A stretch of DNA of 64,000 bases. Source: Neoechinorhynchus agilis (Eukaryota > Animalia > Acanthocephala). The notes under the pieces were generated by a model. The model had not been told where the DNA came from. It did not search any database and saw only the letters and a program-made list of their open reading frames with translations. The translations under genes and the position numbers were made by a program. The stretch spans positions 186,001-250,000 of the forward strand of contig CM121341.1 in NCBI GenBank assembly GCA_051530055.1. The letters are read 5' to 3'. Shown piece by piece: positions 42,001-63,481 of this stretch (positions within the stretch are counted from its first letter, which is position 1; every line of letters starts with the position of its first letter).

Positions 42001-42824
42001 CAAACAACCTTGATTATTGATATTAAAACGTCAATAAATTTAAGATATAATTAACTTTTCTAGATCTACTTTTGACGCCGAATTCACCTGCAATAACTGT
42101 TTGATGTGGCTTGTTAAATTTGTACACTTAGTTTAAGGATTGAAGTTCATAAAAGACACCTGAATTAAATCTGTAGTACTCGTAAGTTATTAGGAAATGA
42201 TAAAACATTTTGAGCATATCCAATGCGCTGATTTCAATTGTGTAATCTAATTTTAATGAATCTTGCAAATTTAGTGATCTTTGACTCTTGTGACTTTTGA
42301 CCAAATATGATAATGCGATTTCCGATTCAGATATTGCAGCTGTAGTTTAGGATTTAAGGTAATTTAGTACATCTTAACGCGCTGATTCTAAATCTGTATC
42401 CGGATTTGCGATAGCTGTTATGGTTCTTGAGTTATTTGTTGTTACATTTTGAGACCAACTACCTTGATTATTGATATTAAAACATCAATCAGTTTAAGAT
42501 CAAATTAACTTTTCTAGATCTACTTTTGACGCTGAATTCACCTGCAACAACGGTTTGATGTTGCTTGTTAAATTTTGACACTCAGTTTTAGGATTGAAGT
42601 TCATAAAAGACACCTCAGTTAAATCTGTTGTGCTCGAAAGTTGTTACGAAATGAAAATTTTTTTGAGCATATCTAATGCGCTGATTTCAATGGTGTCATC
42701 TGATTATAATGAATCTTGCAAATTTAGTGATCTTTAACTCTTGTGAATATTGGCAAAATGTGACAATGCGAATGTTACAGCTGTAGTCTATTGAATCAGG
42801 TAATTTAGTGCATCTTAACGCGCT
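1..42824. repeat. Tandem satellite array, 454-bp monomer (about 95 copies, open at the left window edge)
   Basis: The landmark TAACGCG recurs at 18, 472, 926 and 1380 (period 454) and continues to 42824. Most monomers carry a GAATTC site and many a TCTAGATCT site. Monomers differ by scattered substitutions and become more divergent from about 39000 onward. Confidence 0.99.
9093..9443. repeat. 351-bp satellite variant (103-bp deletion); first of 11 copies
   Basis: The junction ...TAAT(A/G)ATTCTT|CTGAATTCAC... occurs near 9146, 10404, 14367, 18615, 22104, 25172, 29336, 32860, 34572, 37644 and 37995. Landmark spacing from 9093 to 9444 is 351. Confidence 0.93.
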
Positions 42825-44815
42825 CTTCGCCATTAAAATTGTTTTGTTCTCCAACCATAAGTTCGGAGGATGTCCTGTTTGCATTATTGAGTTGAAGAGT
42901 ATGGTCAAACCAACGTAGTGCGCTTCGAGTGCCTTGACGCTCCTGAGTGATATTTTGTCCGGTCCAAGTGCATTTCCAGGTTCAATTCCTCGGATGGCGT
43001 TTTCAATTTCTTCTTTTGTTATAACGGGCACATTTTGAAGTAAAATTGGATCGTCAGGAGAGTTGTCCTCTATTAAATACGACTGGTTATCGCCTTCGAA
43101 GAGAGCGCCGTAATGCTTTATCGCCGTCGATGGATTAATATTCGGCATTGATAATCTCGCATCTTTAAAAATTTCGTTTGCAAGACGTGCAGTATCATTG
43201 AAATATAGGGCGCGGTTACGCTGCCTCTCATTATTCTTCGATTGCCGTTTATTCAGTGCGCGCATTCGAACGCATTGGTATAGACCGGATTCATCAATCC
43301 AAATATTGAATGACGATTTCGCAATTGTTCCTGAACGAATCCTTTGAGGAGGATCAATATTTGGGCCATTGATTACAAAATCGCATTCATATGCTGAAGC
43401 GGCTTTATAAAATTAAATGTTGCGAGAGCACTTGACAATTCTTCAATGCCTCAATCGCAGCCTCAATTGTAATGTTAGCATCCTGTAATCTTTCGCAAAG
43501 GATCTCGAATGTTTCAAGTTTCGCCCCGATTTCTTCAAGAAGACGAATTTGTATTTTTCAGTATAGGGATGGGTTGCCAAAAACATGAAAGGCCGCTGCA
43601 TATAATGCAATTGTTGGTGATTTCCTCAGTTTTATAATTCGAAGCCCCAATTCTTTGGCTTTTGAAATCGTTTTTGATTCGAATGTATTTGTCTTTCCAC
43701 ACCTCAAATAGTTGCTATATCTTGCTTCAAATTCATCAACAAATTCTCTATCAATTGATCCTGATTGATTTCGCATTATTTCTTGTTCCTTTTCTATTTA
43801 GTTTCTATACCGAGGGTGCATCCTATCATTTACTGGGGAGCTAAGTAAGAACTCGAAGAATTCCTCCGAAGTAAAATTGCTTTGCTAGGCACCCTTAGAG
43901 ATCCACAGGGTCCATTTTCATTCTCTGATTGTAATGAGGTAGATATAATGTCCGCTGTCGCAAGCTTAATAGGCAGAGTTGGGGAAGCTCATAAGTTGAG
44001 GTAGGTATCGCGGCTGAAGTTTTTCTGGAAAATGAGGTACAGAACGTGTGTCGGGAGCACGAGCTTCAATATCATTTTCTCTTCCGCAAATCTTTGTCAA
44101 CGATGGTTGCCCAAGTTGAAGTATACACGATGCGTCTGATAATCGTTTGCGACATGGAATGTCAGCAACTTTGCATTGCATCTTTTGGTCCTCTTCTGTA
44201 GGGGTAATAACAGACTCATTGTTCACAGCAGGAATTTCGGCAGTCTTAAACCTTTTCAAACAATTTTTTTGCACTGACTAAAGTGATTGCGCGCACATAT
44301 AAAGGAGAACGAGCGATGATTTTGACAATTATGGCAGCGAAATTCGATTTCCGTGCAGTCGTGATCGTCCTTAGGTGCTCAATGACGAAATTATACTGTC
44401 CTAGTATAACAATTTTCAGTGGACACGCAGGCAAGAAACTGGGCCTCCAGCACCAAAGTATTCAACAGTTACCGAACTTTTCTTTTCGTGGTCGCTTTTG
44501 TATCGATTTTTGTCATAAGCGCGCCTTGTGTTGTCTGGGAATCGTTCCTGACACCTTTTGAGATGAGGCCCCATTGATCATACCTCCGGGCATTCATACA
44601 CACGGCAGATTGGACAAATCCACATAGTAACATTGTGCTTATGAACGGTGGCCTGGTGTTCATTGAAGAGTTTAACACTCGATTTGCCAACCGCCATAAG
44701 ATCACAATCCCCACATTTCAATCCATACTCTTGAGAAATGGGGTATATCATTTTGTGGTCGTCTTTCACACCATCAGTCGCTTGTACTGTACCCGAGACG
44801 ATAGCTCTTGAGGTT
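42825..44815 (-). mobile_element. R2-like element D, degenerate 5' half (zinc fingers to pre-RT region), frameshifted
   Basis: Fragments match element A by eye: YPISQEYGLKCGDC...H...H...WICPIC, ACPLKIVILGQYNFVIEHL, RNQSGSIDREFVDEFEARYSNYL, LGLRIIKL, RNRALYFNDTARLAN, GPDKISLR, WLENKTILMAK. It stops before the RT core, at the satellite junction. Confidence 0.9.
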
Positions 44816-47269: not shown

Positions 47270-50200
47270 GCAAATTTAGTTTATATTTTTATTTCTTTAT
47301 TATTTCAATCTGGTTTTGTTAGTTGGTCGATATTCCTCTGTTGTTTTTTAACTTGTAGATTGTTTTTAACAATCGTAGAGAACAAGTTCACCCCATGAAG
47401 TGGTTCTGTAATTGCATTGGTTTCTGTGCTGCCGTTATTGGCGTGGTTAACGTGATCTATTCCGATAAACTGAACACACGTAGTCTTTTTAGTAGTACCG
47501 TCAAGTTCCTTCCTCGTGTTCCGACTACCAATCTGATTGTCTTAACATCGTGTTTTTTGAAATCGTATTGAGTTGCAATTTTTTCAGCGATAACTTTGTA
47601 TTTTGTTTCTTTTTCCGACATAATATTCTCGGTTGTCTTTTGTCGTCTCAGTGCACCGTAAAATCTATGATGTTTCCCTTTTTCCCGCGATCTAAGAATA
47701 TAATATCCGGTTTTTGGAGGTGACATTAGTTGTCGTAGATACGGTTTTCGGTAAGAACCCATCTAAAGTGTCCTTGGACTGCATCATGACGCTCTATCAT
47801 TTTCGTTGTATTTTTCGAGCATTGGTAGAGCACATGAATTTGGATCTCTGCTTGTGCAGTGCAGTTTCTGCAATTCTTACTTCGAGCATTGTTCATCCAA
47901 GACAGATTTGATGCTACCTCTAACAGTTGATACCGCATTGTGTAATTGTGATGGTTGTGTGGCCGGTATCGAAAAGTTAGCGCCGGATGATTGAAATGCC
48001 ATCCGTGAACGCGTCCATTCCTAGGTATTGAGTTGATGCGTTTTCCCACATTTTCTTGAGGTATTCTATATAGATGTTTCTCATGTTTTTCATTGAGGAT
48101 CCAGCGGTGCTGGTAAAATATTCCCCGAGATTTTTGTAAAGACGATGGTCCTCGTCGAGGTTTTGATACATCATTCCGTATCTTGTGTTCAACAGCATTT
48201 GCCTTCTCCGTGATGGTCGTGGCCCCGACGAACGCCGCCTCATATTTGAGGTTTCGTACAGCGGCCTCCATATCACGTGTAAATGAACCATTTTTATCAG
48301 TTGGTACGAACGAATTGTAATTGCGATATTTGTCACGTTTATCTCTCTTATCCACTCGGATGTGCTCAGTTTCACCAACAGTATTCTTTGCCCTACTCAT
48401 ATAAGCCAAGAAGGCCGTACCTAAGTCAACTGGACTGTTGGGCAACGACTCTAAATCAAGGTCGTCATTGTAAGTTGTCATGACTGGCAGATCATCAAGA
48501 TGGGATAATGCCTGAAACTCCTCTTCGATTTTCTCTATCATGGTCAAACTGGAATCAATTTTGAGCTGGGCTACCCTAGACTTTTCCAGAATTCCGAGTA
48601 ATATAGGATCACGAGGACGTTTGATTAACGATTCTCGTGTAGACTCGACTTGCCTCTGATTCTGGGAGAGGATCTCTTTAAACTCAATCCTTTTCTTAGC
48701 CAATATTTTACTGACTGTCGAGCGAAATTTAGCTCGTATTTGCGTGTGATTAGAACTGCGTATGAGATCAGTAGGGGAAGCACCAAAAATTTGAGTAACG
48801 ACAGAAAGTTGATCTTGTTGTGTCAAAGTACTTTCGGATAAATCCGTAGAGCCAGAATTGACATCTTTAGGAGGCAAGACCACAACGGGATCACCTTCAA
48901 TCTTCTTTTCAGTAAGAGGGGATGGGAGCGAAGGCCCAATTATCGATTCAACAAGATGAGGAAGAATAGTGGCTATAACCGCCCTAGCCCTAGAGAGCAA
49001 TCTTCTAGTAACCATTGATATGCGGGCTTGGCGGGTAGTGAGAGCCTCAAATGTAGGGCAGAAAACACCCAAGCCAGTAATGAGACCACCAGCCATCAAT
49101 TCTTCTTCCGAAAGGAGTTTAAGCTTAAAGAGTTGAGCGGCAACGAGAACACGTATGAGGAGGAGGGTCGAGGTGTTGCGCTTAATTTTAATCGTGTGAT
49201 TGGATTTAGTTCCATCAAACACTTCACGAACGGACAGTTCATCGTCCATGTCAAGATCTGCGAATGTCCGATGAAAAAGATGATGAGCCCAACCATGAAT
49301 GTTCTGGAATGAAGAGGCAGATTGCCCTATCCTTTTACCACAGTCAATGCATGTCTTACGAGCTACGACATACAAATCATAATAATCACTAGGACTAAGA
49401 AGAGTTTCAGGACTGAAATGTTGCTCGTATTTGCTTATTTCACTCGATTTCAAGATACAGGGGCGAGCTATATCTTTATAGAAAGCGAGGAATGCGTCAA
49501 GGAAAGCTCTCCTTTCAATGAAGGGCGTATCCGTAGGCAATACAGCCATTTCAAAACCACCCTGTCTAAAAGCTAGTCCTCGAAGAGAAGAGTCGGCTCC
49601 GTATACATCGTCAGGGTGACAAGAGAATACAGTGAGGGCGAACTCAACCATACTCTTCTGCGAACCCGTAATCAGACGATAGATACTTAAAGCCTTCAAA
49701 TTAGATGAATCTCCGGTAGATGGTGGCACAACGGCCTCTGGTAAAGAAGACCCGGCAACAGAGGTCGACGACAATGGGATGGTTGCCTCAACGTTAGAAG
49801 TCGAAGGTGGCGGAGCAGAAGCTATTTGACAAGGCTCTACACCAACATGCGAAATCTGAACGGGTTTAGCGAATTGCGGCTCACGCACGGTGGTGGTCTC
49901 CACCGTATACGTCGCCTCAAGAGAAATATTCGACTCGCGCTGGGCAGTGGTCTCTGCCTTTGGCGCCGTCTGGGCCGCGGGTGTCTCATCTATCACATTT
50001 ACACGATTGGCGTTAGCAACGTCCACTGACACACCTCGCGCGCCCCTCAACCCGTATATAGCGTTAAATCGTGCAACGAGTTGGTCTCTTGACATATATG
50101 GTGTACCTCGAAGATTGGCGGTAGGATTGTCTTCGAGAATATACCCAGTAGGTTGGCGCACCTTCGGGGCCTTGGGGGTCAAAGGTTCTCCCAATGGTTG

Positions 50201-53200
50201 CGCAGAAGCACTCACACGACTAATATCTACAGCTTTATCACCCTTGGGCAAGATGGAAATGACAGACCTCACATTCCGAACGGGAGAGAGAGGTACGTTA
50301 TATACCGGAGTGTATCCGTATAGAGAACGACCCTGCACCTGCTCGTACGGAATATAAGTTCCCTCACTTATCATCTTTTCCAACATGCGAGCATGAGTTA
50401 AGTTTGAATCACGATGTTGCATGGAGAAGAGTTGGTTCTTACCGAATGCTTTATCGACAAAAAACTCAGTCCTCGTTTGCTTCTCCACTGCTCGTCAATA
50501 CGTGTCAAGTTAGTAGACGATATGTCCCAGGATGCTTCGAGCTCAGCAATCAGGGCCTGAGTTTGCGTAAGTTGGGCACGCTCCGTAGCAGCAGAAAGAG
50601 ACCTCAGAAGGTCTAAACCCTCCTCCAATGTAATTTCCTTCAATGGAGTGCCCCCGTGGTATTTTACTGGATCCCTTTCCATGATGGCCTTTAGCTTTAT
50701 GCCGTTTACCCTTAATTTAGATTCACGGTCCACCATGAGCTTAGAGCTTTTGTAACTATGATGATATGTCAGACACTTATCAGGGCTCAAGAAAAGCTTG
50801 CATTCTTTGAGCTTACTTTGAAGAGTGTCTATCATTGCTTGGAGGTCCGGATAATTGTCAGCTAATAATAGTACGTCATCTGCATATACCAAATGCGACA
50901 GGCGATGGTCTTTCTTTAGCTGGCATCCCGTATCGAGTTTTCGGACGTCATGCAGTGCCTCGTCTACGCACAGCGCGAACAGCAAAGGAGAGAGGGGGTC
51001 CCCTTGCTTTACTCCTCTCAAGAAATTAATGGGATCTGAGGGTCTGGCGTTAGACATACGGATCCTCGTAGTACTTCCACGGTATGTGCTCATGACGTAT
51101 CTTTGCCGATACGCAAGACATCCCTTTCTACGAAGTGCTTCCTCTACAGCAGCGTGCGAAACGGTGTCAAAAGCACTCTTGATGTCAAAAACAGCTACTG
51201 CGAGAGGTTGCTTGTTTGCCCGCTTTTCTCTTACTACACTACGGAGAGTGAGAAGATTGGCCATACATGCCGATCGGTCAAACGCCGTTTGTCCTTCGTC
51301 CAGAGAGCATACTCTACGAAGCCGTTGCAGAATAATGCGGTGCAGGACGCGCATTAAAACGGAGGAGATCGTAATTGATCTCTAGGTCGACTGAGTTGGT
51401 AGCTTCTCCGGTGACGCACTTGATTTGGGCAACAGAATTGTTTTTGACTCACTCCATGATTGTGGATGGCCTCCATGTTGCATGACGAAGTTGAAAAGCA
51501 ACGTCGTGCCCAGAAGTAGCGGATCGAATGTGCGAACATCACGAACCGTTATCTTATCCGGACCCGGTGCGCTTGAAGCTTTGATGCTTTTAAGGGCATC
51601 TTCAACCTCCACCGTTGTGATTACCGGCCACCGCATTTCGAGCGACTGCTGTTGATATGCAACAGTACTTTCCAGCAGACGCTCAGTCCAATGCTCCCTT
51701 CGTATAAAGGACGATAATGATCAACTGTTTCTTGATGACTCAGTTGACACTCTTCGCTCAGTATTTTTATACACTTCGGCTGCCAACTTTGAAGTGTTTG
51801 CGTAGTAAAGAGTTCGATTTCGTCTCCCCTTGAGCATACCGTCCTGGAACCTCGTAATTCGGCGACACCTAACACACGGGTAGGTGCCCGATTCGTTCGT
51901 CCACACGTTGTACGCGTGAGTTCCGATTCCGGGGCAAAAGATTCGACGCACTTGTCGTTCATAAGGCGAGCGTCAGAGACGCTTTGCGCAACTTGCGCAT
52001 AGTACTCTGTCTTGAACCTCCATTGTTATTTTCGTCACTACGTTTTTCTGCAATGAATAATTGCCCATCACGTGGTAGGCAATAGCACAGAGAGCCTGCC
52101 TCGGACCTTTCCTCAACTTGATTTTAAAACCAAGCTGTCGCGCCTGGGAAACTTCCGGCACCCCAACACTACGGCCACACCGAAGACACTGTGCATATTG
52201 CGTAACAGCAGCGTCAATAGTCTCCATTAATGGATCCGTCCGATCGACGGGGGATTTCTCTCTCCGTCTCAAGGAAACCCTTGTATCTTGGATGAAAGTT
52301 TTTCTTGTTCAGCACATCCAGTACGCTCTCATATGCCTCGACCACTGTAAAAACAGATGGCTCGACTTTACAGTCTGCCTCTGCTGTTTCCCCTTCCCAC
52401 TGGCGTAACGACTGTGTCATATGAAGAACACGGCAATTCCTTGCCACCTACAATGGTAGGAACGGACAGAAGATAGGCTTCCTTCTGTTAGGACTTCAAA
52501 TATCCCCGGGGGTTCGCGCTCCTCGCTAGCCAGCTCGATGACCGATTGTTCGATTGATGGATCCATTATTTAGTTTCTTTCCTTTAAAGTCACGGATACA
52601 GCCACCTTGCTCTCGACGCCTGCAGGCGTTCATATGACTACGCATTGACACATAGTTTTCTGACTTATATGTCGAACACGCCGGGCACTGAAACCACACT
52701 CAGGTTGCTCCGTGTTCGAACATAAGATGTTCTTTCAATACTTTTGTCCGGTTACTTCAGTGGAACGTGGCATTACATTCTCGGCATTTCACTGGTCCCT
52801 CTGGTTCTGTGCTTTCTATCATCAAGCCACCTTTGCCTACTAAAAGGGCTACCTTTTCGACTGTATCGTCATCATACAACGCTTTTGCCTTTGCATGATG
52901 CTTTTTCGAGCACGTTTTGTAATGTTGGTCAATAGAGCCTATCGCCCCTTTTTGCAAGCCCGCATATCCATCTCACCGCCTGTTTGTAAGATGGAGACAT
53001 GTGTTGGATTGTCAACTTCACTTTTGATTTTCCCGTATGTACAACTCTAGGATCGCATATTGGACATTTTATTGATTCTTGAAGAACACGATGGTACTAA
53101 AGGTACACACTTGTAAGCTGTTGATCACTCTGTAATTGTTGATGAGCGTCATCTGAAACGAGGAGCACCAAGTCCCCGGCGGAAGGGGGTGTACCAAATT

Positions 53201-53669: not shown

Positions 53670-53887
53670 TCACTGAATAAGTAAAGAAACAATGATGGTA
53701 GTGGTATTTCACCGACGCGGCCTCCCTCCTATTCTACGCCCATCATGTTTCTTCACAGAGACTGACTAGAGTCAAGCTCAACAGGGTCCTCTTTCCCCGC
53801 CGTTACTCTCCAAGCCCGTTCCCCTTGGCTGTGGTTTCGCTAGGCTGCAGACAGGGACAGTAGGAATCTCAATAATCCATTCATGCA

Positions 53888-53919
<32 letters not shown>
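53670..53919 (-). rRNA. 28S rRNA fragment (250 nt) starting exactly at the R2 insertion site
   Basis: TAGCCAAATGCCTCGTCATCTAATTAGTGACG...GACCCTGTTGAGCTTGACTCTAG...GGTGAAATACCACTAC...TTACTTATTCAGTGA. Confidence 0.96.
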
Positions 53920-56900
53920 GAGCTACATTTATTCAAAGAAAAAAAATTACAAGCTTCTCGTAATCGACATCATTTTATTATTATTAGTTCCGGTTGTTAA
54001 TTATTGCTCAACTTATTTGTCTTCTCTATTATATTTTGTTGAAGGATAGTTAGCTGTCCTTCCTTATCTTGGTATTTTCAATTTTTGAGCATAAATCGTC
54101 TTCCGCAGAAGGCGTGAAAGACGCGAATGGACTGTTCCGCCGCCGTCCTTGCCATGTTGATAGCAGTCTTTGTCCCTAGAGAGAGTATACGAAGGCGGTT
54201 TAAAAGTTCCGCACTAAATGTTCCTCTTGATCCTACTGCAATGCCTATGGTCGAGACTTTATGTTGAGGAACTTTATACTTTTCAGCGACACTTGATATA
54301 ATCGACCTATATTTTTCTTCCTTGTGAGTCATTACTTCATCGGCACGTTTTAAACTAGTTTCATAATAAACGGCAACGTCTAGAATGTATACCTTGTCGG
54401 TGTCCCGCTGACGAAGGATAAGGTCAGGTTTATATAGTTGTCCTTCACTGTCGTGGAACTTGTTTTCACTTGAGACGTCAAACTGTGTACCATATTTGTT
54501 TTTAATAGCCCAAATTAATCGTCCCTGAACTTTATCGTGGCGCCAGGTCATAGGAATCGATGATGCATCGCACGCGTTGAGTACATGTGCACACATCTCT
54601 GCCGTTGCTGTGCAGTGCCTGCATCCTTTTGTGCGCTGTTTATCCATCCGACTTAAAACGGTGCCCACTTCCAATAGTTGTAAACGCAGCTTCACTTGCT
54701 CAACATAGGAACTGTGGTATCCCTGTCTGTATCTAAACGTAATCAAACTTCGGTCGAATTTACCACCGGCGAAGCACTCAATACCCGTTCCTTGGGTTGT
54801 CGTAGCCTTCCAATGTTTTAGGCAGTCCTCAGCAAAGCTGTCATGACAGATCAGTTCCCTACGTTCCTCATTTTTACGTATATCGATGCTTATACTGTTT
54901 GAGCCCATGTCAAGTGATTTGAGCTCTTTTTCCATATCTACTTGATTTCCGTACTTATTTAAAACTGCTCGAATTGCTTTAATTCTGGCATTCCTAATTT
55001 CATGAGCTATGGAACGAAATCCCAAACCGCCTTTCGATAAAGGCAAATAGAATGCCCCGTCATTTACGTAGCGAGGTAGGTCTAGCAATTTTTTAATTCT
55101 TGAGCGCCATTGCTCGTCTATGCGAGCAAGGCTAGTAGCAGAGACATCCCAAGCAGCGTTCAACCTACCCAGTAAGCGAGGAACCCCATAATCATTAAGC
55201 AAATGAGCTGCTTGCGTCCTAGTGAGCTGAGCAGTTTTTACCTGTGCGAAAAGCCTATTCAATTCGAAGAGCGCTTCTTCTAGTGTAGTATCTTTCCACG
55301 GCGTTCCCCCGGGGTACCTAATGGGATCGCCTTCCAACACGGCAGCTTATTTAACGCCCCCAATGCTTACCTCTGATTTATAATCGACGACCAATGTGCC
55401 GCGTTTGAAGGTTTGTCGATAGGTAACGCACTTTTCTGGGCATAGCATAAGTTGCATCTTGCTCAACGTTTCTTGTAATACATCGATCATTCTTTGCAGG
55501 TTCGGGTAGTCGTCAGCAACCAGAAGAATGTCGTCCGCATATACCAGATGAGATATACGAACGTCCGTTTTTAGTTTAACTCCAAGGTTAAGTTGTCTGA
55601 CTTTCTGTAATGCTTCGTCCAGAACTAAAGCGAAAACAAAAGGAGAGAGCGGGTCTCCCTGCCTAACTCCTCTTCGAAAACTTATGGGTTCGCTTGGTTT
55701 GCAGTTATTCATTCGTATTCTTGTTCGACTCGAACTGTATGACTTCAAAATATATCTATGTAAGTATCGAGGGCATCCTTTTGAGCGAAGAGCCGCGTCA
55801 ATATCGTGGTGCGAGACGGTATCGAACGCGCTCTTGATATCTAATATGGCCACTGCCGCAGGTTCCTTAGCGTTCCTTTTTTCTCTTAGCAAGCACTTGA
55901 GGACAAGGAGGTTGGCCATACAGGCTGATGGGTCAAAAGCTGTTTGGCCCTCATCGATGTTGCACGTTGCCCGGATCCTCTTCAAAATAATACGGTGAAA
56001 TATCCGCATTAGAATAGAAGATATGGTAATTGGACGCCACCCATCTTGTGTGCGTAGCTTTCCGGGAGGAGCACTTGGTTTAGGAATCAAAATTGTTTTC
56101 GACTCCAACCATGATTTAGGAGCCTCGCCGCATTGTAGCACATAATTGAATAGAAGGTTCATCCCAATGAGAAGAGGGTCGAAAGTCCGTATGTCTCTAA
56201 TACTTATTCTGTCGGGACCTTGTGCGCTAGAAGCTTTGATACAATCGAGTGCCTCCTTTACCTCATCGACGGAGACGAGTGGAAATGGGTCTACTCCTGG
56301 ATACCTATCTGTCATGCACGAACTTCCATGCGACGTGTCAAGTGAAGTACCACCTTCAAATAGGTTGCGATAGTGCGAAACTGTATCTTGGAACTCCAAT
56401 GGACAATTAACCCTGTCAGCACTTTTAAAGACTTCATTTGCCAGCTTCGACGTATTGGAGAAGTAAAGTGCTCTGTTTCGTCTTTTGTCAAGCTCTCGAT
56501 TATGGGCCTTTGTCAGACCTCGGCAGCGAGTGCATGGATAGATACTGCCTTCGTCGGCCCAGACACAAAAGACGTTCGCCCCAGTTCCCGGACAGAGGAT
56601 ACGACGCACTTTGTGATCATCCGGACTGTAGACCAACCAATCGCAAGAGTACGCAGATGCGGCAGCAAACAAAGCGAAAATTGGAGAGATTACTCTGCCC
56701 AAGAGAAAACCGTTCAGATGGTCTTCTAGGGAAATGTTGGCGTCTGGAACATTATTAGCTATCAAACGATAGTATCCTATATTACTGTTAATCTCACTGA
56801 CCAATTTTTCAGAGACTTTCTTCCATCGTGCTGGGTTTCGGTAGACATGGTACGCGATCGCGCAAAGCGATTGTGTTGCACCTCTTCTCAATTTGATTAT

Positions 56901-58692
56901 TCTAAGGCCGGCTTGTCTGGCTTTCGAGACTTCGGGACTCACCTTACTGCGTCCGCATCTTAGGTAATCTTCATACCGTGTAGCAGCCATCTCGACAAAG
57001 CCTTTATCGATCGGTCCTTCTGAATGGCGTAAGACGTTGCGCTCCGTTTCCAGATAGAACCTATATCGGGGGTGAAGGCCATTCTTTTTAAGAGACTTCA
57101 CGACGCCCTCATAAGCCTCTTCGATACTAAATTGTGATTCATTTCTCTCTCCATGTTCAATTAGTGTATCGCCTGTCGAAAAACTGGACGCCAAAGAATC
57201 GGGACGTCGCACCCAAGGAGTCGACAACTCTTCACTGTTTTCAAGCCAAATGTGCGCTGCAGACGCGACAGAATCGAAAAGCCGACTCGAGATATTCCAC
57301 GACTCGTGTGGCGAAGTGGAAGTAGGACCTTGCAGCACCTCTACGAACTCACGAAGGTGACCTGCAGACGGCACAAAGCCGACCGGCGGGCAGGACAGCT
57401 CAAGGCTCCCCACACCCTGCTCAGCAGCATCGCGCGCATGTGTACTGGGGTCGCGACCGTCAGACAAATGAGTCCCGTCCCCGGAATAAATGTGTTTTTT
57501 CCGTGCTGGGGAGGCTTGCACTACGAGAGACAACGGCATCCTCTTCGGGGGCATAAATATCCGGTCTTTCCGCGTGCTCACTGACACAGTAAGTGGTCCT
57601 ATCGCAAAATAAACCGTCTTTCCTTTCTTGGGCTTCACTTGTTGTTACCCCAGTGTCCGCGTCTTTTACCTTAACTCGCTTAAAGCACTGTGAATAATGC
57701 GCTCTGGCGGAGTAAATCGAAGCAGTGGAGTGGGTGTTACAGAGGGCGCAAATATACGTGATACTCTTCGCCAAATGGCATACTCTAAGGTGGTTTTCCA
57801 GAGAATTGTACTGCCCACGACCCAAAATTTTTTCATCGCAGCTCGGGCAGACGGCTGGTGAAGTTCCCCTGCGTAGGTAATTGCGGCCTCATTGAGCACT
57901 GGAAAGGTTTTGTTACCCTCCTCAATTTTTCTCAAGATCTCTCTATATGCAGAGACATTAAGAATCTTGCATTGGCGAGTATGCGCTCCAACTCTTCCTG
58001 GGGCTGCGCTCCGAAAATTGTTGCAGATTTTACACACCCATGAGATTGGCCCTCGCGCATGACTTTCTTTCATATGCTCAAGAAAGAGACTGTGCCTCGT
58101 TCTGCCCATAGCCTGAAAATTGCACAGAATACATTCTAAGTTATTTTCGGCCGTGATCGGATAACCAACTTCGATCATCGAGAGAGCAGGAGTCTCGCGG
58201 TCTATTGAGGAACTCATAAGAACTGGATAAAAGCTTAAAATAAAATAAAACTGTTATTAATTATCTAAAATCTACGAGAAATTCCTATCGGAGACCCTAT
58301 TAAATTGATAAAATACGTAAATAAAATTTCTAAATCACGTCACAGAAACACGGAAGAAGCGTCGAAAAAAACTGCGTCTCGCTGAAAGACGAAGCAAATC
58401 TCGCGGACTTAAAAAACGTGTTTAGGGGTGTCAATAACCCCCAGGAGCGACTTTAAATTAAAAATAAAGATAACTTTTGGGAGCGTGAATTGGCACGGGT
58501 TAAAAGGGCTGTGCTCTGCGAACGACGTAGACAGAAGAGCTCAGACCCCGTCGAGTTAGATAACCACGTGACGCTCTATCAAAAGCACTTCAATTACTTG
58601 TCGCTTAAGATTTTAAGTCCGGCGAAGATCTTTTTAAAATTTGAAAGCGGCAGATGTTGATATCTTTTGATGATAGATGGAAGTTACGTGCA
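53920..58692 (-). mobile_element. R2-like element B, full length, frameshifted
   Basis: ORF pieces 57666-58217, 57460-57825, 55347-57638 and 54078-55340 contain four zinc fingers, RQGDPLSP, YADD, CRHC...HVLNAC and KPDL...LDVAV...KEEKY. The 3' end abuts TAGCC. About 470 nt of putative 5' UTR precede the ATG at 58217. Frame breaks lie near 57865, 57630 and 55345. Confidence 0.93.
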
Positions 58693-58707: not shown

Positions 58708-58858
58708 AAAAATGGAAGGTTTGTAGGCTTCCCCTGGCTGCTGCATTGGCCATGTAGATTGCTGTTTGCCGGTTTAGGCCAAATTTTGCTAAGCGGTTGA
58801 GAAAGGTTGTTGAGAAAGATCGTCGTGACCCGATACGAATTCCAACTGTAGACCTGAA
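58708..58858 (-). mobile_element. Second copy of the family X tail, also truncated at its 3' end
   Basis: Identical by eye to about 53519-53669, with the same junction to 28S. Confidence 0.85.
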
Positions 58859-59075
58859 TCACTGAATAAGTAAAGAAACAATGATGGTAGTGGTATTTCA
58901 CCGACGCGGCCTCCCTCCTATTCTACGCCCATCATGTTTCTTCACAGAGACTGACTAGAGTCAAGCTCAACAGGGTCCTCTTTCCCCGCCGTTACTCTCC
59001 AAGCCCGTTCCTTTGGCTGTGGTTTCGCTAGGCTGCAGACAGGGACAGTAGGAATCTCAATAATCCATTCATGCA

Positions 59076-59107
<32 letters not shown>
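58859..59107 (-). rRNA. 28S rRNA fragment (249 nt) starting exactly at the R2 insertion site
   Basis: Same sequence as 53670-53919 except GTTCCTTTGG versus GTTCCCCTTGG on the plus strand. Confidence 0.96.
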
Positions 59108-59251
59108 GAGTCGTATTTATTAGACGATTTCAAACAAATAATTTACACATTCTTTTCAATCATTGGCTTGGGTTGGTTTCTTTGGTTTTCTTGCTTTTTT
59201 TGTTGCTCGTAGTTTCTTTTCTTTTTTTTTCCAATTGTAACTGTTGATCGG

Positions 59252-62200
59252 CTAACGCAGTGACCAAGTGTGGCCCATAAAGTTGTTAAAAACTTGGATT
59301 GATTTATCGGCTGCTGTTTTGGCCATATTTACCGCAGTCTTTTCCGATAGGTTGAACACGCGTAATCGTCTTAGTAATTCGGGCGTGTATGTGCCTCGGC
59401 TTCCAACTGCCAATCCGATTGTTATTACGTCATGCTGTTTTAGATTGTACAGGGTTGCCACTTGCTCCGAGATAGGTTTATATTTAGCTTCTTTTTCTGC
59501 CATAATATTTTCGCCTCGGTCTCTTGTAGTCTCATAGTAGACCGCAAAATCAATGATGGTTGCTTTCTTTTGTTGTCGATCAATGAGGAGGAGATCTGGT
59601 TTATATAGTTGCCCTTGTTTATCATGTATACGGTTCTCGGTGTGAATCTCCCACCGAGAGCCCCATCGCTTCTGTAGAGCCCATGTGAAGCGTCCTTGGA
59701 CCGCATCATGACGCTCTACCATTTTGGTTGTGCTTTTCGGGCATAGATTCAGGACATGCAGTTGTGTCTCGGCTGGTGCCGTACAGTGCCTGCACATCTT
59801 ACTTCTGGCTTGGTCCATCCTTGAAAGATTTGTTGCGACCTCCAGCAGTTGATACCTCATTTTTACCCGCATTGTGTAATTGTGGTGGTTGTCCTGACGG
59901 TATCGAAAGTTTAGCTCGGAATGATCAAAAAGTCCTCCTGTGAACGAGTTTATTCCCAGAGATTGAGTAGATGCGTCTTGCCACTTTTTTTCCAGATATT
60001 TTGCATAAATATTCTTCAGGTTCTCGACTGTGAAATCGACCAATGACCCAGCGATGCTTATAAAATATTCTTCGAGATTTTTATAAAAACGTTGATCTTC
60101 GTCCAACTCACAATAATGTGATTTTGCTGCGATGTAAGTCTTCACTCTTGAACTCATAACAGAGTGTTTAATGGACGAAAAACCAAGACCTCCCTTGCAT
60201 AGTGGTAGGAATAATACCCCATCGTTTAAAAAATGGGGCAGAAATAAAAGCTTCTTTAGTTTTGTCCTCCAGAGCTGTTCAATCTTGTTTAAGGAGGTTG
60301 GCGAAATGTCGTGTGCCGCTTGTAATCTTGAGACGAGGCGCGGGAGTCCATAATCATTTATCAAGTGAGCTGCTTGTGTCGGACTTAGGCCAGCCGCCTT
60401 TGTTTCCTCGAAAAGTCTTAATAGTTCCGCCGACATTTCTTCTATATTGGTGGGCTTCCATGGTGTACCGCCCAGATATTTAATGGGATCTCCGTCTATT
60501 ATTGTGTTTAGTTTCGCTTCCCCAATGTAAGCAGTTGGCTCTCTCTCGACGACCAGTTTGTTATAAACATACCGTTGGTTGTAAGTTCTGCATTTGTCAG
60601 GCGATAGTTTTAGTCCCTTCTTAGAAAGTCTTTTATTCATGGCGTCAATCATTCGCTGCAGGTCCGTCATGTTGTCCGCAAGTAGGAGAATGTCGTCCGC
60701 ATACACTAGCTGGCTTAAGCGGCCGCTTCTGGTTGAGCACCCCAACCCTAGTTCGTCGACCTGTCGCAGGACATCGTCAATGCAGAGGGCAAAAACGAAA
60801 GGCGAAAGTGGGTCTCCCTGTTTCACGCCGCGATGAAACTTAATTAAGTCCGATGGTCTTGAACTAGGGAGGTGGAGCCGGGTGTATGAAGTACTGAACA
60901 CCTCCATCAGATACCGCCGCATGTATATTGGGCAGTTGTGCGCAACTAGTGCATGGTGTATTGTGTCATGGCTTACCGAGTCGAAGGCAGATTTGATGTC
61001 GAGAACTGCCAATGCGATTTGCTTCCTATCCGATCTCTTCTTTTTCAGCAAATCCCTCAATATGAGGAGATTTGAATTGCACGCTGCGCTGTCAAACGCC
61101 GTCTGGCTATCATGCAAACTGCAGCATTGTCTTAATCTTTCCAGGATAACCCGATGCACAATGCGGAGTAGAATGGATGATATTGTGATCGGTCTCCAGC
61201 CGGACATTGAATTCAAAGATTCATTATTCATCCCATTTTTCGGAAGCAAAATGGTCTTGTTTTGTAGCCAGGACCTTGGAGGAGAGCCCACTTGCATGAC
61301 GGAATTGACCAAGATTGTGAGCCCAACAAGGTGCTTGTCGAAAGCACGAATTTCCCGAAGTGTGATCTTATCGGGACCGACGGAACTGTTTGACTTTATG
61401 GCACGAATCGCAGCTTGTAATTCCTCCACGGTTACAGCTGGCCATAATTCCTCCAGCGCAAATGATTCACGCGAACCGGAGTCGGCAGACATACGAGTCG
61501 TGACCTGGAAATCTTCGAGCAGTGACCGTAAGTGTTTAACACATTCCTGTTGCGGTATAGAAGGCTGGCGGTTTTCATCCGATTTAAATATCAAGTTAGC
61601 AAGTCGACTTGTGTTGTTGAAATATAGGGCGCGGTATCGTCTTTTAACAAGATCATTTGACTGTTTCGAGTTCAGGCCTCGAGAACGCTCGCAGGGATAA
61701 GTTCCAGAATCGTCGATCCAGACGTTAAATGATGAAATGGAGACCGTTCGAGATCGGATTCGAATTGGGGCATCATCGTTTGTTGTATAAACTACAAAAT
61801 CACATTGATAAGCAGTCGCTGCGGCCCAAAGAATGAAATGAACTGACAGTTCGTTGTCCCTTTTAAGAGCATCAAGAATGTCATTTAATGATAGATTTGC
61901 GTCCGGTAGCATTTTGACTACATGCTCAAAATATTGGCGTTCACGAAATACAGAGTCCAAAATGCGATCCTTAACTCTCCTCCATTGTGTAGGGTTCCTG
62001 TGAACGTGAAAGGCGACGGTCGCTAGTGCCATTGTTGAGTTTTGTTTCAGCTTAACAATTTTGAGGCCGAGACTGCGCGCGCGGGACATTGCTGGGCATT
62101 CGAGAGATCTTTGCCGCCCGATTTTTAGGTACAATTGATATCGCTCGTTCATTGAATCGATAAATTCCTGATTAATTGGACCGGTTTGATTGCGTAGAAC

Positions 62201-63403
62201 GTCAGATTCATTGCTCAGAAAAAAGCGGTACCGTGGATGAATATCCGGTCGTTGAAGATAATTAAGAACAAATTCATGTCCTTCCTGTGCTGTAAACACA
62301 CATGCCCCAATATGGGGTGTAGGCACCTGATGCAGGTTAACACGATCACTCGGTTTACAAATTCTTGAGGTAGATGATTGAGTTGAGGTAGTAATAGAAT
62401 TCGAGGCAGTTCTTTGTGGTGTGATTTTAATATTTGATGGACCGTTATTGCGTTGAGCGTCATTGTAAACAGGATTAGTAACAGTCACCTCCTGCAGAAC
62501 ACAACCATTCGAATCGTCGCCCGTTCGGCGTGTCTTCTTAGGCGAGTGTTGTGAAATGTTATCTCCTTGATCTGGTAGCCCTGATAGTCGTTTCCGAGAG
62601 ATTATGTTGAGCGCTTCTGAGGTGTAGCGGTTTGAATTGAGGCAATTTTCTGATTCCTCCGGTTTGTACGAAGATTTTAAGTCCCTATCTTTGGAAACAG
62701 ACTTACAGTGTGTAACGTGGGAACGAATAGCTGGAAGTGCATCGTATTGAACAGCGCACGCTAGGCATTGAAAGGCTGTCGAATTTGATCTGTGGACGTT
62801 CTCCAAATGGCTGACAAGAGTGTTATAACGTCCTTTTCCCACGAGCGAAAGTTCGCATGCCGGACAAGCAGCTGGATCGTCCTCTCCTGATTTGTATAAA
62901 ATGATTGCGGTTGGTGCCGGATTGACATTAGCATGAGGATTCACAGAACTTAAAACCATGTTTCTAAATATTTCAGGTTGGATTGCTTTGCATCGTCGGA
63001 AATGTAGTCCAACACTCCGAGATTCGCGATGCTCAAAACTGTCACAAATGGGACACACCCAAATCACCTCCGCGTATTCATGGGCCCCATGGAGGTGTGC
63101 GAGTAGCAGCTTGAACTTTGACTGTCCAACGCATCCGAGACTACATACCGGGCAAAGAAGCATGTTGGTTTGATCGATTGGATAGCGAATTCTTATTGTT
63201 TTGTCTGCTGGATTATTGTTACTCGGTCTTTGGCCACACTTGGTTTGCTGTTGTTTGCTCATTCGATGATGTTGCTGTTGCTGTTGGTCTGAACGATGAG
63301 CGTCATCTAAAGATGAGCGCTTAGCAACCGATGGACGCGGGGCCACTAATGACTCCGAATATTCGTCGATGATTTTCTGGGTAGATTTTTGCGAGGAAGT
63401 CAT
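59252..63403 (-). CDS. R2-type protein: zinc fingers, Myb-like, OTU-like, reverse transcriptase, CCHC knuckle, PD-(D/E)xK endonuclease
   Basis: Uninterrupted ORF. The track starts at a GTG (63415); the first ATG is at 63403. Motifs: GPDKIT, WRPITI, LDIKSAFDSVSH, GVKQGDPLSP, YADD (60692-60703), KYLG, CRHC...HVLNLC, KPDL...IDFAV...KEAKY. Confidence 0.97.
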   Translation of the reverse strand: MTSSQKSTQKIIDEYSESLVAPRPSVAKRSSLDDAHRSDQQQQQHHRMSKQQQTKCGQRPSNNNPADKTIRIRYPIDQTNMLLCPVCSLGCVGQSKFKLLLAHLHGAHEYAEVIWVCPICDSFEHRESRSVGLHFRRCKAIQPEIFRNMVLSSVNPHANVNPAPTAIILYKSGEDDPAACPACELSLVGKGRYNTLVSHLENVHRSNSTAFQCLACAVQYDALPAIRSHVTHCKSVSKDRDLKSSYKPEESENCLNSNRYTSEALNIISRKRLSGLPDQGDNISQHSPKKTRRTGDDSNGCVLQEVTVTNPVYNDAQRNNGPSNIKITPQRTASNSITTSTQSSTSRICKPSDRVNLHQVPTPHIGACVFTAQEGHEFVLNYLQRPDIHPRYRFFLSNESDVLRNQTGPINQEFIDSMNERYQLYLKIGRQRSLECPAMSRARSLGLKIVKLKQNSTMALATVAFHVHRNPTQWRRVKDRILDSVFRERQYFEHVVKMLPDANLSLNDILDALKRDNELSVHFILWAAATAYQCDFVVYTTNDDAPIRIRSRTVSISSFNVWIDDSGTYPCERSRGLNSKQSNDLVKRRYRALYFNNTSRLANLIFKSDENRQPSIPQQECVKHLRSLLEDFQVTTRMSADSGSRESFALEELWPAVTVEELQAAIRAIKSNSSVGPDKITLREIRAFDKHLVGLTILVNSVMQVGSPPRSWLQNKTILLPKNGMNNESLNSMSGWRPITISSILLRIVHRVILERLRQCCSLHDSQTAFDSAACNSNLLILRDLLKKKRSDRKQIALAVLDIKSAFDSVSHDTIHHALVAHNCPIYMRRYLMEVFSTSYTRLHLPSSRPSDLIKFHRGVKQGDPLSPFVFALCIDDVLRQVDELGLGCSTRSGRLSQLVYADDILLLADNMTDLQRMIDAMNKRLSKKGLKLSPDKCRTYNQRYVYNKLVVEREPTAYIGEAKLNTIIDGDPIKYLGGTPWKPTNIEEMSAELLRLFEETKAAGLSPTQAAHLINDYGLPRLVSRLQAAHDISPTSLNKIEQLWRTKLKKLLFLPHFLNDGVLFLPLCKGGLGFSSIKHSVMSSRVKTYIAAKSHYCELDEDQRFYKNLEEYFISIAGSLVDFTVENLKNIYAKYLEKKWQDASTQSLGINSFTGGLFDHSELNFRYRQDNHHNYTMRVKMRYQLLEVATNLSRMDQARSKMCRHCTAPAETQLHVLNLCPKSTTKMVERHDAVQGRFTWALQKRWGSRWEIHTENRIHDKQGQLYKPDLLLIDRQQKKATIIDFAVYYETTRDRGENIMAEKEAKYKPISEQVATLYNLKQHDVITIGLAVGSRGTYTPELLRRLRVFNLSEKTAVNMAKTAADKSIQVFNNFMGHTWSLR

Positions 63404-63416
63404 AGTTACGTCCACC
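63314..63416 (-). ncRNA. Candidate HDV-like self-cleaving ribozyme overlapping the start of the element A ORF
   Basis: GGTGGAC (63416-63410) can pair with GTCCATC (63336-63330), which is followed by GG, TT and GCTAA. This order matches P1, P1.1 and J4/2 of R2 ribozymes. The P3/L3 segment is shorter than canonical. Confidence 0.45.
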
Positions 63417-63450
63417 GTTTACCCGCGCTTAAATTAATTTCTTCACTTTA

Positions 63451-63481
<31 letters not shown>

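What the first reader, a model, noticed from the sequence alone, without database searches (positions are those of the whole stretch)
61691..62071. Apparent catalytically dead OTU-like domain between the DNA-binding region and RT, in all four families
Seen: A reads LGLKIVKLKQNSTMALATVAFHVHRNPTQWRRVKDRILDSVFRERQYF...LNDILDALKRD...ILWAAATAYQCDFVVY...IRI...FNVWIDDSGTY. The equivalent block is in B (about 56530-56915), C (about 51880-52130, partly deleted) and D (about 43280-43650). Established: OTU proteases follow LGLxIxxIxGDGNCLFRAVAxxL...VRxxxxxY...YLxxMxxxxxW...ELxAxxxxYxxxIxVY...IxLxYxxxxHY. The spacing and hydrophobic pattern fit, but the catalytic Cys position is Ala or Ser and the His is Thr, Ile or Leu. 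Canonical R2 proteins have only zinc fingers and Myb here. Inference: a pseudo-deubiquitinase retained for binding ubiquitin, RNA or protein, defining an unusual R2 lineage. This rests on alignment by eye.
Basis: inference. Interest (0 to 1): 0.8.

Follow-up and report, generated by a model that had tools for sequence, protein, structure and literature searches.

The report
Dead OTU domain inside R2 retrotransposons
The R2 jumping genes in the ribosomal DNA of a thorny-headed worm carry a deubiquitinase-like (OTU) domain that has lost all its catalytic residues, an R2 protein architecture that I did not find described in the papers I could search.

Summary
The quoted residues are aa 449-573 of an intact 1387-aa R2 protein (copy A, minus strand 63415..59255). 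Equivalent blocks sit at the stated coordinates in copies B, C (partly deleted) and D (broken).

A search of 1.84 billion proteins found 20 relatives. All are R2-type proteins, and all named ones come from the acanthocephalans Neoechinorhynchus agilis (the likely source of the window) and Pomphorhynchus laevis.

With an 18-sequence alignment, AlphaFold2 gives a confident domain (pLDDT 92, pTM 0.85). Foldseek against the PDB returns only OTU domains in its top 50; the best is OTUD3 (E 7e-8, TM 0.76/0.79). Profile-profile comparison with an OTUD5 alignment gives 91-92% probability (P about 1e-6); 100 column shuffles reach at most 1.4%.

The His position is Thr, Ile, Leu or Cys, and the Asp position is Asn, Gly, Ser or Cys. 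No conserved His exists anywhere in the domain.

The domain is basic (pI 9.2-9.8, against 6.5 for OTUD5). It lies where canonical R2 proteins have ZnF1, Myb and a disordered spacer, and I could not recognise ZnF1 or Myb here.

What the domain binds is untested. This is a new variant of a known kind.

The parts
59108..63401 (-). R2 element copy A, essentially full length, inserted at the canonical R2 site of 28S rDNA
   Evidence: The 3' junction reads ...aaatacgactc|TAGCCAAATGCCTCGTCATC at 59107. The 5' junction reads GTAACTATGACT|tcctcgc at about 63400. 28S rRNA lies upstream.
59252..63415 (-). Intact ORF of copy A, 1387 aa (R2 protein: zinc fingers, helical block, OTU-like domain, RT, zinc knuckle, restriction-like endonuclease)
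   Evidence: ORF list. Pfam RVT_1 at aa 725-982, E 1e-35. PDB R2 proteins 9nl2, 9nl3 and 9dou match at E about 1e-78 from aa 591 to the C terminus.
62705..63157 (-). Two CCHH+CCHC zinc-finger pairs (aa 87-144 and aa 184-237), of the ZnF3:ZnF2 type of lineage-A R2
   Evidence: Sequence. Weak alignment of aa 180-299 to the zinc fingers of 9nl2.
62072..62296 (-). Conserved 75-aa helical block (aa 374-448; FTxEE..HPRYR..RYxxYL) of unknown fold, just before the OTU-like domain
   Evidence: Conserved across the family. Predicted helical at low confidence. No Myb or R2 match in Pfam or the PDB.
61682..62071 (-). Catalytically dead OTU-fold domain of copy A (aa 449-578). This is the finding; the modelled construct was aa 443-588 (61652-62089).
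   Evidence: AF2 pLDDT 92, pTM 0.85. Foldseek: OTUD3 E 7e-8, TM 0.76/0.79, and all top 50 hits are OTU. hhalign 91-92%.
62030..62032 (-). Codon of Met462, at the position of the OTU catalytic cysteine (the OTUD5 Cys in DGACLFRA)
   Evidence: The same register comes from the HMM alignment to OTUD5 and from hhalign. It is the N terminus of helix 20-30 of the model. Family table.
61700..61702 (-). Codon of Thr572, at the position of the OTU catalytic histidine (start of the last beta strand, GTYPC versus IHYNS of OTUD5)
   Evidence: Strand 129-135 of the model. OTUD5 C-terminal sequence. Family table. This assignment rests on motif and secondary-structure register; hhalign did not extend this far.
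61586..61645 (-). Start of the RT N-terminal extension (NTE -1 helix, KRRYRALYFNNTSRLANLIF, from aa 591), where similarity to solved R2 proteins begins
   Evidence: phmmer alignment to 9nl2 residue 292 onward.
56538..56912 (-). OTU-like block of copy B (frame intact through the block; Gln at the Cys position, Ile at the His position)
   Evidence: The N. agilis protein P0003 differs from copy B at only a few residues.
51880..52134 (-). OTU-like block of copy C, degenerate: about 39 aa of the middle deleted, one in-frame stop, and a frameshift upstream
43278..43650 (-). OTU-like block of copy D, degenerate: two stops and one frameshift; Ile at the Cys position, Leu at the His position

Best explanation
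The block is a real, folded, about 130-residue OTU-type (ovarian-tumour deubiquitinase) domain. It is homologous to cellular OTUD-type proteases and built into the single protein of a lineage of 28S-specific R2 retrotransposons of acanthocephalan worms (probability it is an OTU-fold homologue: about 0.95).

It cannot work as a cysteine protease. The nucleophile, the general-base His and the third residue are replaced in every family member, mostly by hydrophobic residues that fill the former active site, and no alternative conserved Cys/His pair exists (about 0.9).

It is kept by selection as a non-catalytic module in the N-terminal arm of the protein, immediately before the RNA-binding NTE -1 helix. 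That is the place where canonical R2 proteins have ZnF1, Myb and a disordered spacer.

My preferred mechanism is inferred, at about 0.4. The domain has been repurposed as a basic docking surface that contacts nucleic acid (the upstream 28S target DNA or the element's own RNA) and/or the RT core. Together with the preceding helical block, it would position the ZnF3:2 fingers in the target-primed reverse transcription complex, substituting for the missing ZnF1-Myb-spacer. Its origin is most simply the capture of a host OTUD-like gene fragment by an ancestral R2.
For: - Fold: AF2 on 18 sequences gives pLDDT 92 and pTM 0.85; all five models score 90-92. Foldseek against the PDB gives 37 hits at E<=1e-3, and the top 50 are all OTU domains: OTUD3 E 6.8e-8, TM 0.76/0.79, rmsd 2.7 over 137 columns, then OTUD5 and OTUD1. 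Even the poor 4-sequence model (pLDDT 58) had OTU domains as its top 11 hits.
- Homology: the family HMM's best PDB hit is OTUD5, E 0.023 over 100 residues. hhalign against an OTUD5-family alignment gives 91-92%, P 7.5e-7 to 1.1e-6, score 41-42. One hundred column shuffles give mean score 10.8, sd 2.2, maximum probability 1.4%. One member touches Pfam OTU at E 0.054.
- Dead site: both alignments place Met462 on the OTUD5 catalytic Cys and Asn459 on the Asp. Across 14 members the Cys position is L, M, I or Q. Across 14 members the His position is I, L, T or C. The only invariant Cys is in the 'PC' motif, three residues after the His position. No column has His in more than 50% of members.
- Selection: the domain is conserved down to 18-26% identity in full-length intact ORFs (A 1387 aa, P0011 1177 aa, P0012 1492 aa) from at least two named acanthocephalan species plus unnamed assemblies. 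The adjacent linker is unalignable between copies.
- Placement and charge: similarity to solved R2 proteins begins at aa 591, about 13 residues after the domain. The spacer there in canonical lineage-A R2 is 30-80 aa, variable and unresolved (PMC12180492). No ZnF1 or Myb was detected. Eleven members span 137 residues or more of the domain; ten of them have pI 9.2-9.8 and net charge +5 to +11 (P0013: pI 8.3, net +2), against pI 6.5 for the OTUD5 domain.
- The elements still sit exactly at the R2 site.
Against: - Nothing here measures binding of anything. The nucleic-acid or docking role rests only on position, charge and the apparent absence of ZnF1/Myb.
- The helical block before the domain could be a very diverged Myb, in which case nothing needs replacing.
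- Three fragmentary members (P0005, P0015, P0017) are not basic.
- The His-position assignment rests on motif and secondary-structure register, not on a printed structural alignment.
- Pfam's OTU model does not reach its threshold on any member.
- Only copy A in the window is intact. Activity of the lineage is inferred from intact ORFs, not shown.
Confidence: 0.55

Rival explanations
1. A ubiquitin- or ubiquitin-like-binding pseudo-deubiquitinase. The dead OTU keeps its S1 ubiquitin-binding surface. It would tether the R2 ribonucleoprotein to ubiquitinated nucleolar chromatin or host factors, or shield ubiquitin chains to evade host control.
For: The fold is that of ubiquitin- and ISG15-binding OTU domains, and many top hits are ubiquitin complexes. 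Catalytically inactive DUB folds that still bind ubiquitin are an established class (own knowledge). The helix corresponding to OTU 'EMQAMAEMY' is among the best conserved parts (AA..Y).
Against: The active-site cleft that holds the ubiquitin tail is filled with Leu/Met and Ile/Leu. Ubiquitin-binding surface residues could not be assessed. The strongly basic charge differs from OTUD5. No R2 biology so far involves ubiquitin recognition.
Confidence: 0.25
2. A functionless relic. An OTU domain was captured once, lost its activity and is drifting; it persists only because deleting it would disturb folding of the neighbouring parts.
For: All catalytic residues are gone. Copy C has lost about 39 aa of it.
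Against: Copy C is a dead copy with stops and frameshifts anyway. The fold-determining pattern is kept at 18-26% identity across species and in intact full-length ORFs, and new family-specific motifs (NP, AA..Y, PC) are 80-100% conserved. The neighbouring linker is free to diverge beyond alignment.
Confidence: 0.1
3. Still an active protease or hydrolase using non-canonical residues, for example the invariant Cys575.
For: One Cys is invariant in 14 of 14 members.
Against: That Cys lies three residues after the His position in the last beta strand, so by strand alternation it should point away from the cleft (inference). No His is conserved in more than 50% of members anywhere in the domain. 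The canonical nucleophile position is hydrophobic.
Confidence: 0.03
4. There is no OTU domain: the block is the ordinary variable R2 spacer, and the resemblance is chance or a modelling artefact.
For: Pfam gives no significant OTU hit. The 4-sequence profile found nothing in the PDB.
Against: Three independent lines agree in the same register: the confident AF2 model with Foldseek hits, HMM to OTUD5, and hhalign with its shuffle control. Canonical spacers are short, variable and disordered (PMC12180492).
Confidence: 0.02

Closest known systems
OTU-family deubiquitinases of the OTUD subgroup (human OTUD3, OTUD5/DUBA, OTUD1; Pfam PF02338, MEROPS C85)
   Same: Same alpha/beta fold with the same order of elements: strand, Cys-helix, helical lobe, four-stranded sheet. 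TM 0.63-0.79. Detectable profile similarity in the Cys-loop helix (xLxFRxVA) and the 'E.QA.AE.Y' helix.
   Different: Cys, His and Asp/Asn are all replaced. There is an extra conserved 'DAN.S' loop insertion and a 'NP' motif. The domain is basic rather than near-neutral. It is embedded in a retrotransposon polyprotein. It does not reach Pfam's threshold.
Lineage-A (A-clade) R2 retrotransposon proteins with solved structures (turtle PlaMe, zebra finch TaGu; PDB 9nl2, 9nl3, 9dou)
   Same: Same insertion site in 28S. Same core from NTE -1 through RT, thumb, zinc knuckle and restriction-like endonuclease (E about 1e-78). ZnF3:ZnF2-type CCHH+CCHC fingers at the N terminus.
   Different: Canonical proteins have ZnF1, Myb and a 30-80 aa unresolved spacer before the NTE motifs (PMC12180492). 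Here those are not recognisable. Instead there is a low-complexity linker, a 75-aa helical block and the dead OTU domain, and the ZnF3:2 pair is duplicated in several members.
Pseudo-deubiquitinases (catalytically inactive DUB folds used as scaffolds or ubiquitin binders)
   Same: A DUB fold retained without catalytic residues and conserved.
   Different: Known examples are host proteins in ubiquitin-system complexes (own knowledge). This one is part of a mobile-element reverse transcriptase, and ubiquitin binding is untested.
OTU or other cysteine-protease domains carried by other transposable elements (Ginger1 DNA transposons and Helentrons with OTU; NeSL/Utopia non-LTR elements with a Ulp1-type protease)
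   Same: Precedent for mobile elements capturing ubiquitin- or SUMO-system protease domains (PMC2836005, PMC4067079, PMC4640811).
   Different: None of these is R2: Ginger1 and Helentrons are DNA transposons, and NeSL/Utopia carry a different protease type (PMC2836005, PMC4067079, PMC4640811). That their protease domains are presumed active is from memory. Here the domain is dead. No paper in the searchable library reports an OTU domain in R2 or in another non-LTR element.

Membership tests
OTU deubiquitinase family (PF02338 / MEROPS C85) | OTU alpha/beta fold | tested here: met
   AF2 pLDDT 92. Foldseek top 50 are all OTU; OTUD3 E 6.8e-8, TM 0.76/0.79.
OTU deubiquitinase family (PF02338 / MEROPS C85) | Sequence match to the family model at the curated threshold | tested here: not met
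   No Pfam OTU hit for A or the four window copies at E<=10. One of 18 members reaches E 0.054. Remote homology shows only at profile level (hhalign 91-92%; OTUD5 E 0.023).
OTU deubiquitinase family (PF02338 / MEROPS C85) | Catalytic cysteine at the N terminus of the first long helix | tested here: not met
   Met462 in A. L, M, I or Q in all 14 members that cover the site.
OTU deubiquitinase family (PF02338 / MEROPS C85) | Catalytic histidine at the start of the last strand | tested here: not met
   Thr572 in A. I, L, T or C in all 14 members that cover it. No His column above 50% anywhere. The register is inferred from motif and secondary structure.
OTU deubiquitinase family (PF02338 / MEROPS C85) | Acidic or amide third residue three positions before the Cys | tested here: not met
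   Asn459 in A, but G, S or C in the other members.
OTU deubiquitinase family (PF02338 / MEROPS C85) | Isopeptidase activity on ubiquitin or ubiquitin-like conjugates | not testable with these tools
   Needs a Ub-AMC, di-ubiquitin or activity-probe assay.
Pseudo-deubiquitinase | DUB fold conserved while the catalytic residues are absent | tested here: met
Pseudo-deubiquitinase | Binds ubiquitin or acts as a scaffold in a complex | not testable with these tools
   No binding data. No model coordinates were available for surface analysis.
R2 non-LTR retrotransposon (lineage A) | Insertion at the conserved R2 site of 28S rDNA | tested here: met
   3' junctions |TAGCCAAATGCCTCGTCATC at 59107 and 53919. 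5' junction of A in GTAACTATGACT. Relative P0011 also abuts the site.
R2 non-LTR retrotransposon (lineage A) | Single ORF with RT, CCHC zinc knuckle and restriction-like endonuclease, closest to A-clade proteins | tested here: met
   RVT_1 E 1e-35. 9nl2, 9nl3 and 9dou at E about 1e-78, against R2Bm at 1e-35, with alignment through the C-terminal domain.
R2 non-LTR retrotransposon (lineage A) | N-terminal ZnF3, ZnF2 and ZnF1 followed by a Myb domain | tested here: inconclusive
   CCHH+CCHC pairs are present. No intact ZnF1 and no Myb were detected by Pfam or by PDB profile search. A very diverged Myb in aa 374-448 is not excluded.

The most novel reading that the evidence does not exclude
In this acanthocephalan R2 lineage the universal ZnF1-Myb DNA-recognition module has been replaced by a captured host deubiquitinase domain. 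That domain lost its chemistry and, with the helical block in front of it, became the nucleic-acid-binding or docking module that keeps the element targeted to the same 28S site. This would be an OTU fold repurposed for nucleic-acid or RNP recognition, and a natural example of swapping the targeting arm of an R2 protein.
Probability: 0.3. Interest if true: 0.8.

Novelty: new variant of a known kind. Interest (0 to 1): 0.66.

Why it matters
R2 proteins are the main model for site-specific target-primed reverse transcription, and they are being engineered for gene insertion. Their N-terminal arm is thought to consist only of zinc fingers, a Myb domain and a floppy spacer.

This lineage still lands precisely in the R2 site, yet it carries a well-folded, conserved, catalytically dead OTU domain there and has no recognisable ZnF1 or Myb. 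That shows the arm tolerates, and perhaps exploits, a completely different module. It offers a natural experiment on how target or RNA recognition can be rebuilt.

It also adds a retrotransposon-borne case to the pseudo-deubiquitinases. It extends R2 surveys to Acanthocephala, a phylum not mentioned in the two large R2 surveys I checked (PMC5035012, PMC13188248).

Tried and rejected
- Word-indexed protein searches, with the A segment and with the 18-sequence alignment, returned nothing. The relatives were found only by the exhaustive HMMER search.
- Pfam on A, on the four window copies and on 18 members gave no significant OTU hit.
- The PDB profile search with only four sequences gave no hits.
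- The first AF2 run, with four sequences and the helical block included, was poor (pLDDT 58). It was used only as a hint.
- P0021 from the exhaustive search is a repeat protein with many weak partial matches. I rejected it as spurious.
- A search for a Myb or ZnF1 equivalent in aa 240-448 found nothing convincing by Pfam or PDB profile. The phmmer alignment of 'ENCLNSNRYTSEALNIISRKRLSG' to ZnF1 of 9nl2 has low posterior support and lacks the zinc ligands.
- Rfam found no rRNA on the flanks of L001-L003. The R2 site next to P0011 was found by eye.
- I could not identify the organisms behind GCA_028748465.1, GCA_028748445.1 or SRR34340284 from the literature.
- The idea that the block is the ordinary lineage-A spacer or NTE -2 was rejected because of its confident globular OTU fold.
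- The third fold-search job and a BFVD comparison were not used, as they would add nothing.
Full report
**Context.** The right-hand third of the window (about 42.8-64 kb) is 28S ribosomal DNA read on the minus strand. Rfam finds eukaryotic LSU rRNA at 63293-64000, 58769-58958 and 53580-53769. The rDNA carries four diverged R2 non-LTR retrotransposon copies in the same orientation (tblastn of copy A against the window):
- Copy A has an intact ORF of 1387 aa (63415..59252).
- Copy B spans about 58190..54084.
- Copy C spans about 52354..47373 and is broken.
- Copy D spans 44754..42816; it is the 5' part only, with stops.

Copies A and B end exactly at the canonical R2 site (|TAGCCAAATGCCTCGTCATC at 59107 and 53919). 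The 5' junction of A lies in GTAACTATGACT. The rest of the window (1-42771) is a 454-bp satellite.

Copy A has Pfam RVT_1 at aa 725-982 (E 1e-35). Its best matches are the solved lineage-A R2 proteins 9nl2, 9nl3 and 9dou (E about 1e-78), against 1e-35 for the D-clade Bombyx protein. Similarity starts at aa 591, the NTE -1 helix, and runs through the endonuclease.

**The observation.** The quoted peptide is present verbatim as aa 449-573 of copy A (62071..61697). A, B and D align over the block without gaps at 36-45% identity. The low-complexity stretch before it (about aa 257-372) gives no alignment at all between copies. The block therefore behaves as a constrained protein domain, not a free linker.

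**Relatives.** Two word-indexed searches found nothing. An exhaustive HMMER search of 1.84 billion representative proteins with the four-copy profile found 21 hits. One of them, P0021, is a spurious repeat protein. The other 20 are all R2-type proteins or fragments in which the block sits just before the KRRNRALYF.NTS.L helix.
- All named hits are 'hypothetical proteins' of the acanthocephalans Neoechinorhynchus agilis and Pomphorhynchus laevis.
- P0003 differs from window copy B at only a few residues, so the window is very probably N. agilis.
- Two full-length intact relatives come from unnamed sources. P0011 (1177 aa) comes from two NCBI assemblies. P0012 (1492 aa) comes from a Logan run.
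- P0011 ends next to 'tagcgaaatgcctcgtcatctaattagtgac', the R2 site.

**Is it an OTU domain?** Sequence-to-profile methods alone are not enough. Pfam gives no OTU hit for A or the window copies at E<=10, and only one of 18 members touches PF02338 at E 0.054. Three other lines agree.
1. Structure. AlphaFold2 on aa 443-588 with the 18-sequence alignment gives a confident globular model (pLDDT 92, pTM 0.85; all five models 90-92). The order of elements is strand, helix, four further helices, then a four-stranded sheet. Foldseek against the PDB gives 37 hits at E<=1e-3, and the top 50 are all OTU domains. The best are OTUD3 (E 6.8e-8, TM 0.76/0.79, rmsd 2.7 A over 137 columns), OTUD5/DUBA (TM 0.75) and OTUD1. 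Even the earlier poor model (4 sequences, pLDDT 58) had OTU domains as its top 11 hits, at non-significant E-values.
2. Profile against sequence. The 18-sequence HMM's best hit among all PDB sequences is OTUD5 (E 0.023, 100 aligned residues).
3. Profile against profile. hhalign against an OTUD5-family alignment, built from sequences returned, gives 91-92% probability, P 7.5e-7 to 1.1e-6 and score 41-42 over 89-93 columns. One hundred column-shuffled versions of the query give mean score 10.8, sd 2.2, maximum 17.4 and maximum probability 1.4%. The reversed alignment gives 0.1%.

All three use the same register: GLKIVKLKQNSTMALATVAFHVHRN on [25 protein letters not shown].

**Catalytic residues.**
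- Cys position. In that register the OTUD5 catalytic Cys (in DGACLFRA) falls on Met462 of copy A, at the N terminus of model helix 20-30. The preceding Asp falls on Asn459. Across the family the Cys position is Leu (9 members), Met (3, besides A), Ile (D) or Gln (B). The Asp position is Gly, Ser, Cys or Asn.
- His position. The catalytic His of OTUs opens the last strand (IRVSYHRNIHYNSV in OTUD5). The corresponding strand here is FNVWIDDSGTYPCE (model strands 119-126 and 129-135). That puts Thr572 at the His position in A, and Ile, Leu, Thr or Cys at that position across the family. This last assignment rests on motif and secondary-structure register, because hhalign did not extend that far.
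- No alternative dyad. No alignment column has His in more than half of the members. The only invariant Cys is Cys575 in the 'PC' motif, three residues past the His position, which by strand alternation should face away from the cleft (the orientation is inference).

A Cys/His protease mechanism is therefore very unlikely in any member.

**What is conserved instead.** The best conserved positions are the first strand (LGL.I..L), an Asn-Pro after the first helix, Ala-Ala..Tyr in the helix that corresponds to OTU 'QAMAEMY', and Pro-Cys in the last strand. A 'DAN.S' loop, an insertion relative to OTUD5, is well kept in the N. agilis-type members and looser in the distant ones. Eleven members span 137 residues or more of the domain. 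Ten of them have pI 9.2-9.8 and net charge +5 to +11; P0013 has pI 8.3 and net +2. The OTUD5 domain has pI 6.5.

**Architecture of the lineage.** The order in the protein is:
- one or two CCHH+CCHC finger pairs of the ZnF3:ZnF2 type (duplicated in A, P0002 and P0012; single in P0011);
- an unalignable low-complexity linker;
- a conserved 75-aa helical block (A aa 374-448);
- the dead OTU domain (aa 449-578);
- about 13 residues, then NTE -1, RT, zinc knuckle and endonuclease.

I could not recognise ZnF1 or Myb by Pfam, by phmmer against solved R2 proteins, or by a profile of the helical block against the PDB, which contains R2 proteins with Myb. A very diverged Myb in the helical block is not excluded.

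In canonical lineage-A R2 proteins, ZnF1 and Myb bind the upstream target DNA. The following spacer is 30-80 aa, variable and unresolved by cryo-EM (PMC12180492). Two broad R2 surveys (PMC5035012, PMC13188248) do not mention Acanthocephala, and neither mentions an OTU or other protease-derived domain in R2. Full-text searches found OTU domains only in other transposon classes, namely Ginger1 and Helentrons, and a Ulp1-type protease in NeSL/Utopia.

**Interpretation.** Shown here: a folded OTU-type domain, remotely homologous to OTUD proteases, is an integral and conserved part of the R2 protein in at least two acanthocephalan species, and it lacks the catalytic triad in every member. Inferred: it is kept for a non-catalytic role.

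I favour (about 0.4) a docking or nucleic-acid-binding role that replaces or supplements the ZnF1-Myb-spacer arm. The reasons are its position next to the RNA-binding NTE -1 helix, its acquired basic charge, its hydrophobically filled former active site, and the missing canonical DNA-binding modules in elements that still target the R2 site precisely.

The alternatives are:
- a ubiquitin- or ubiquitin-like-binding pseudo-deubiquitinase (about 0.25), the main rival, which none of my data can exclude;
- a functionless relic (about 0.1);
- a non-canonical active enzyme (about 0.03);
- a chance resemblance (about 0.02), which conflicts with the three concordant lines above.

**Verdict.** This is a new variant of a known kind: an R2 retrotransposon lineage with an unreported accessory pseudo-enzyme domain. 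It is of real interest to the R2 and retrotransposon-engineering field and to those studying pseudo-deubiquitinases. Its function still needs experiments.

Noticed in passing
window 1-42771: A 454-bp AT-rich (about 32% GC) tandem satellite of roughly 94 copies, with occasional 350-bp variants. It directly abuts the broken R2 copy D, so the R2/rDNA remnant array lies at a satellite boundary.
   Followed up: partly
window 53519-53933 and 58708-59121: A 415-bp segment repeated at 98.6% identity. It holds the last ~14 nt of an R2 3' end plus about 400 bp of 28S downstream of the R2 site. Copies B and C begin right after it. Two different R2 families therefore have 5' ends that abut the same 28S position (+~400) rather than the upstream half of the R2 site. 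The array reads [28S]-A-[28S +1..+400]-B-[28S +1..+400]-C. Unexplained.
   Followed up: partly
window 63399-63418 (minus strand): The copy A ORF is open right up to the 5' junction and in frame with 28S. Its first ATG is the ATG inside the 28S sequence GTAACTATGACT. The 28S bases CTCTTAAGG are missing at the junction. There is no room for a 5'UTR, and no ribozyme was found by Rfam. Copy A may be slightly 5'-truncated, or it may be translated from the 28S co-transcript.
   Followed up: partly
window 62705-63157 (A aa 87-237); also P0002, P0012, P0011: The CCHH+CCHC finger pair (ZnF3:ZnF2 type) is tandemly duplicated in A, P0002 and P0012 but single in P0011. No intact ZnF1 and no recognisable Myb follow it.
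   Followed up: partly
window 62072-62296 (A aa 374-448): A conserved 75-aa helical block (FTxEE..HPRYR..RYxxYL) precedes the OTU-like domain in all relatives. Its fold and function are unknown, and it has no Pfam or PDB match. It could be an extension of the OTU domain or a very diverged Myb.
   Followed up: partly
window 58715-58849 and 53514-53660: tblastn of the copy A C terminus (aa 1332-1380) matches a translation of the 28S fragment at 41-42% identity (E about 1e-6). This is probably chance.
   Followed up: no
window 48168-50440 (inside copy C): tblastn similarity of copy C to A is interrupted for about 2.2 kb, although a 920-aa ORF (47726..50488) spans the region. It may be a very diverged stretch or an insertion.
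   Followed up: no
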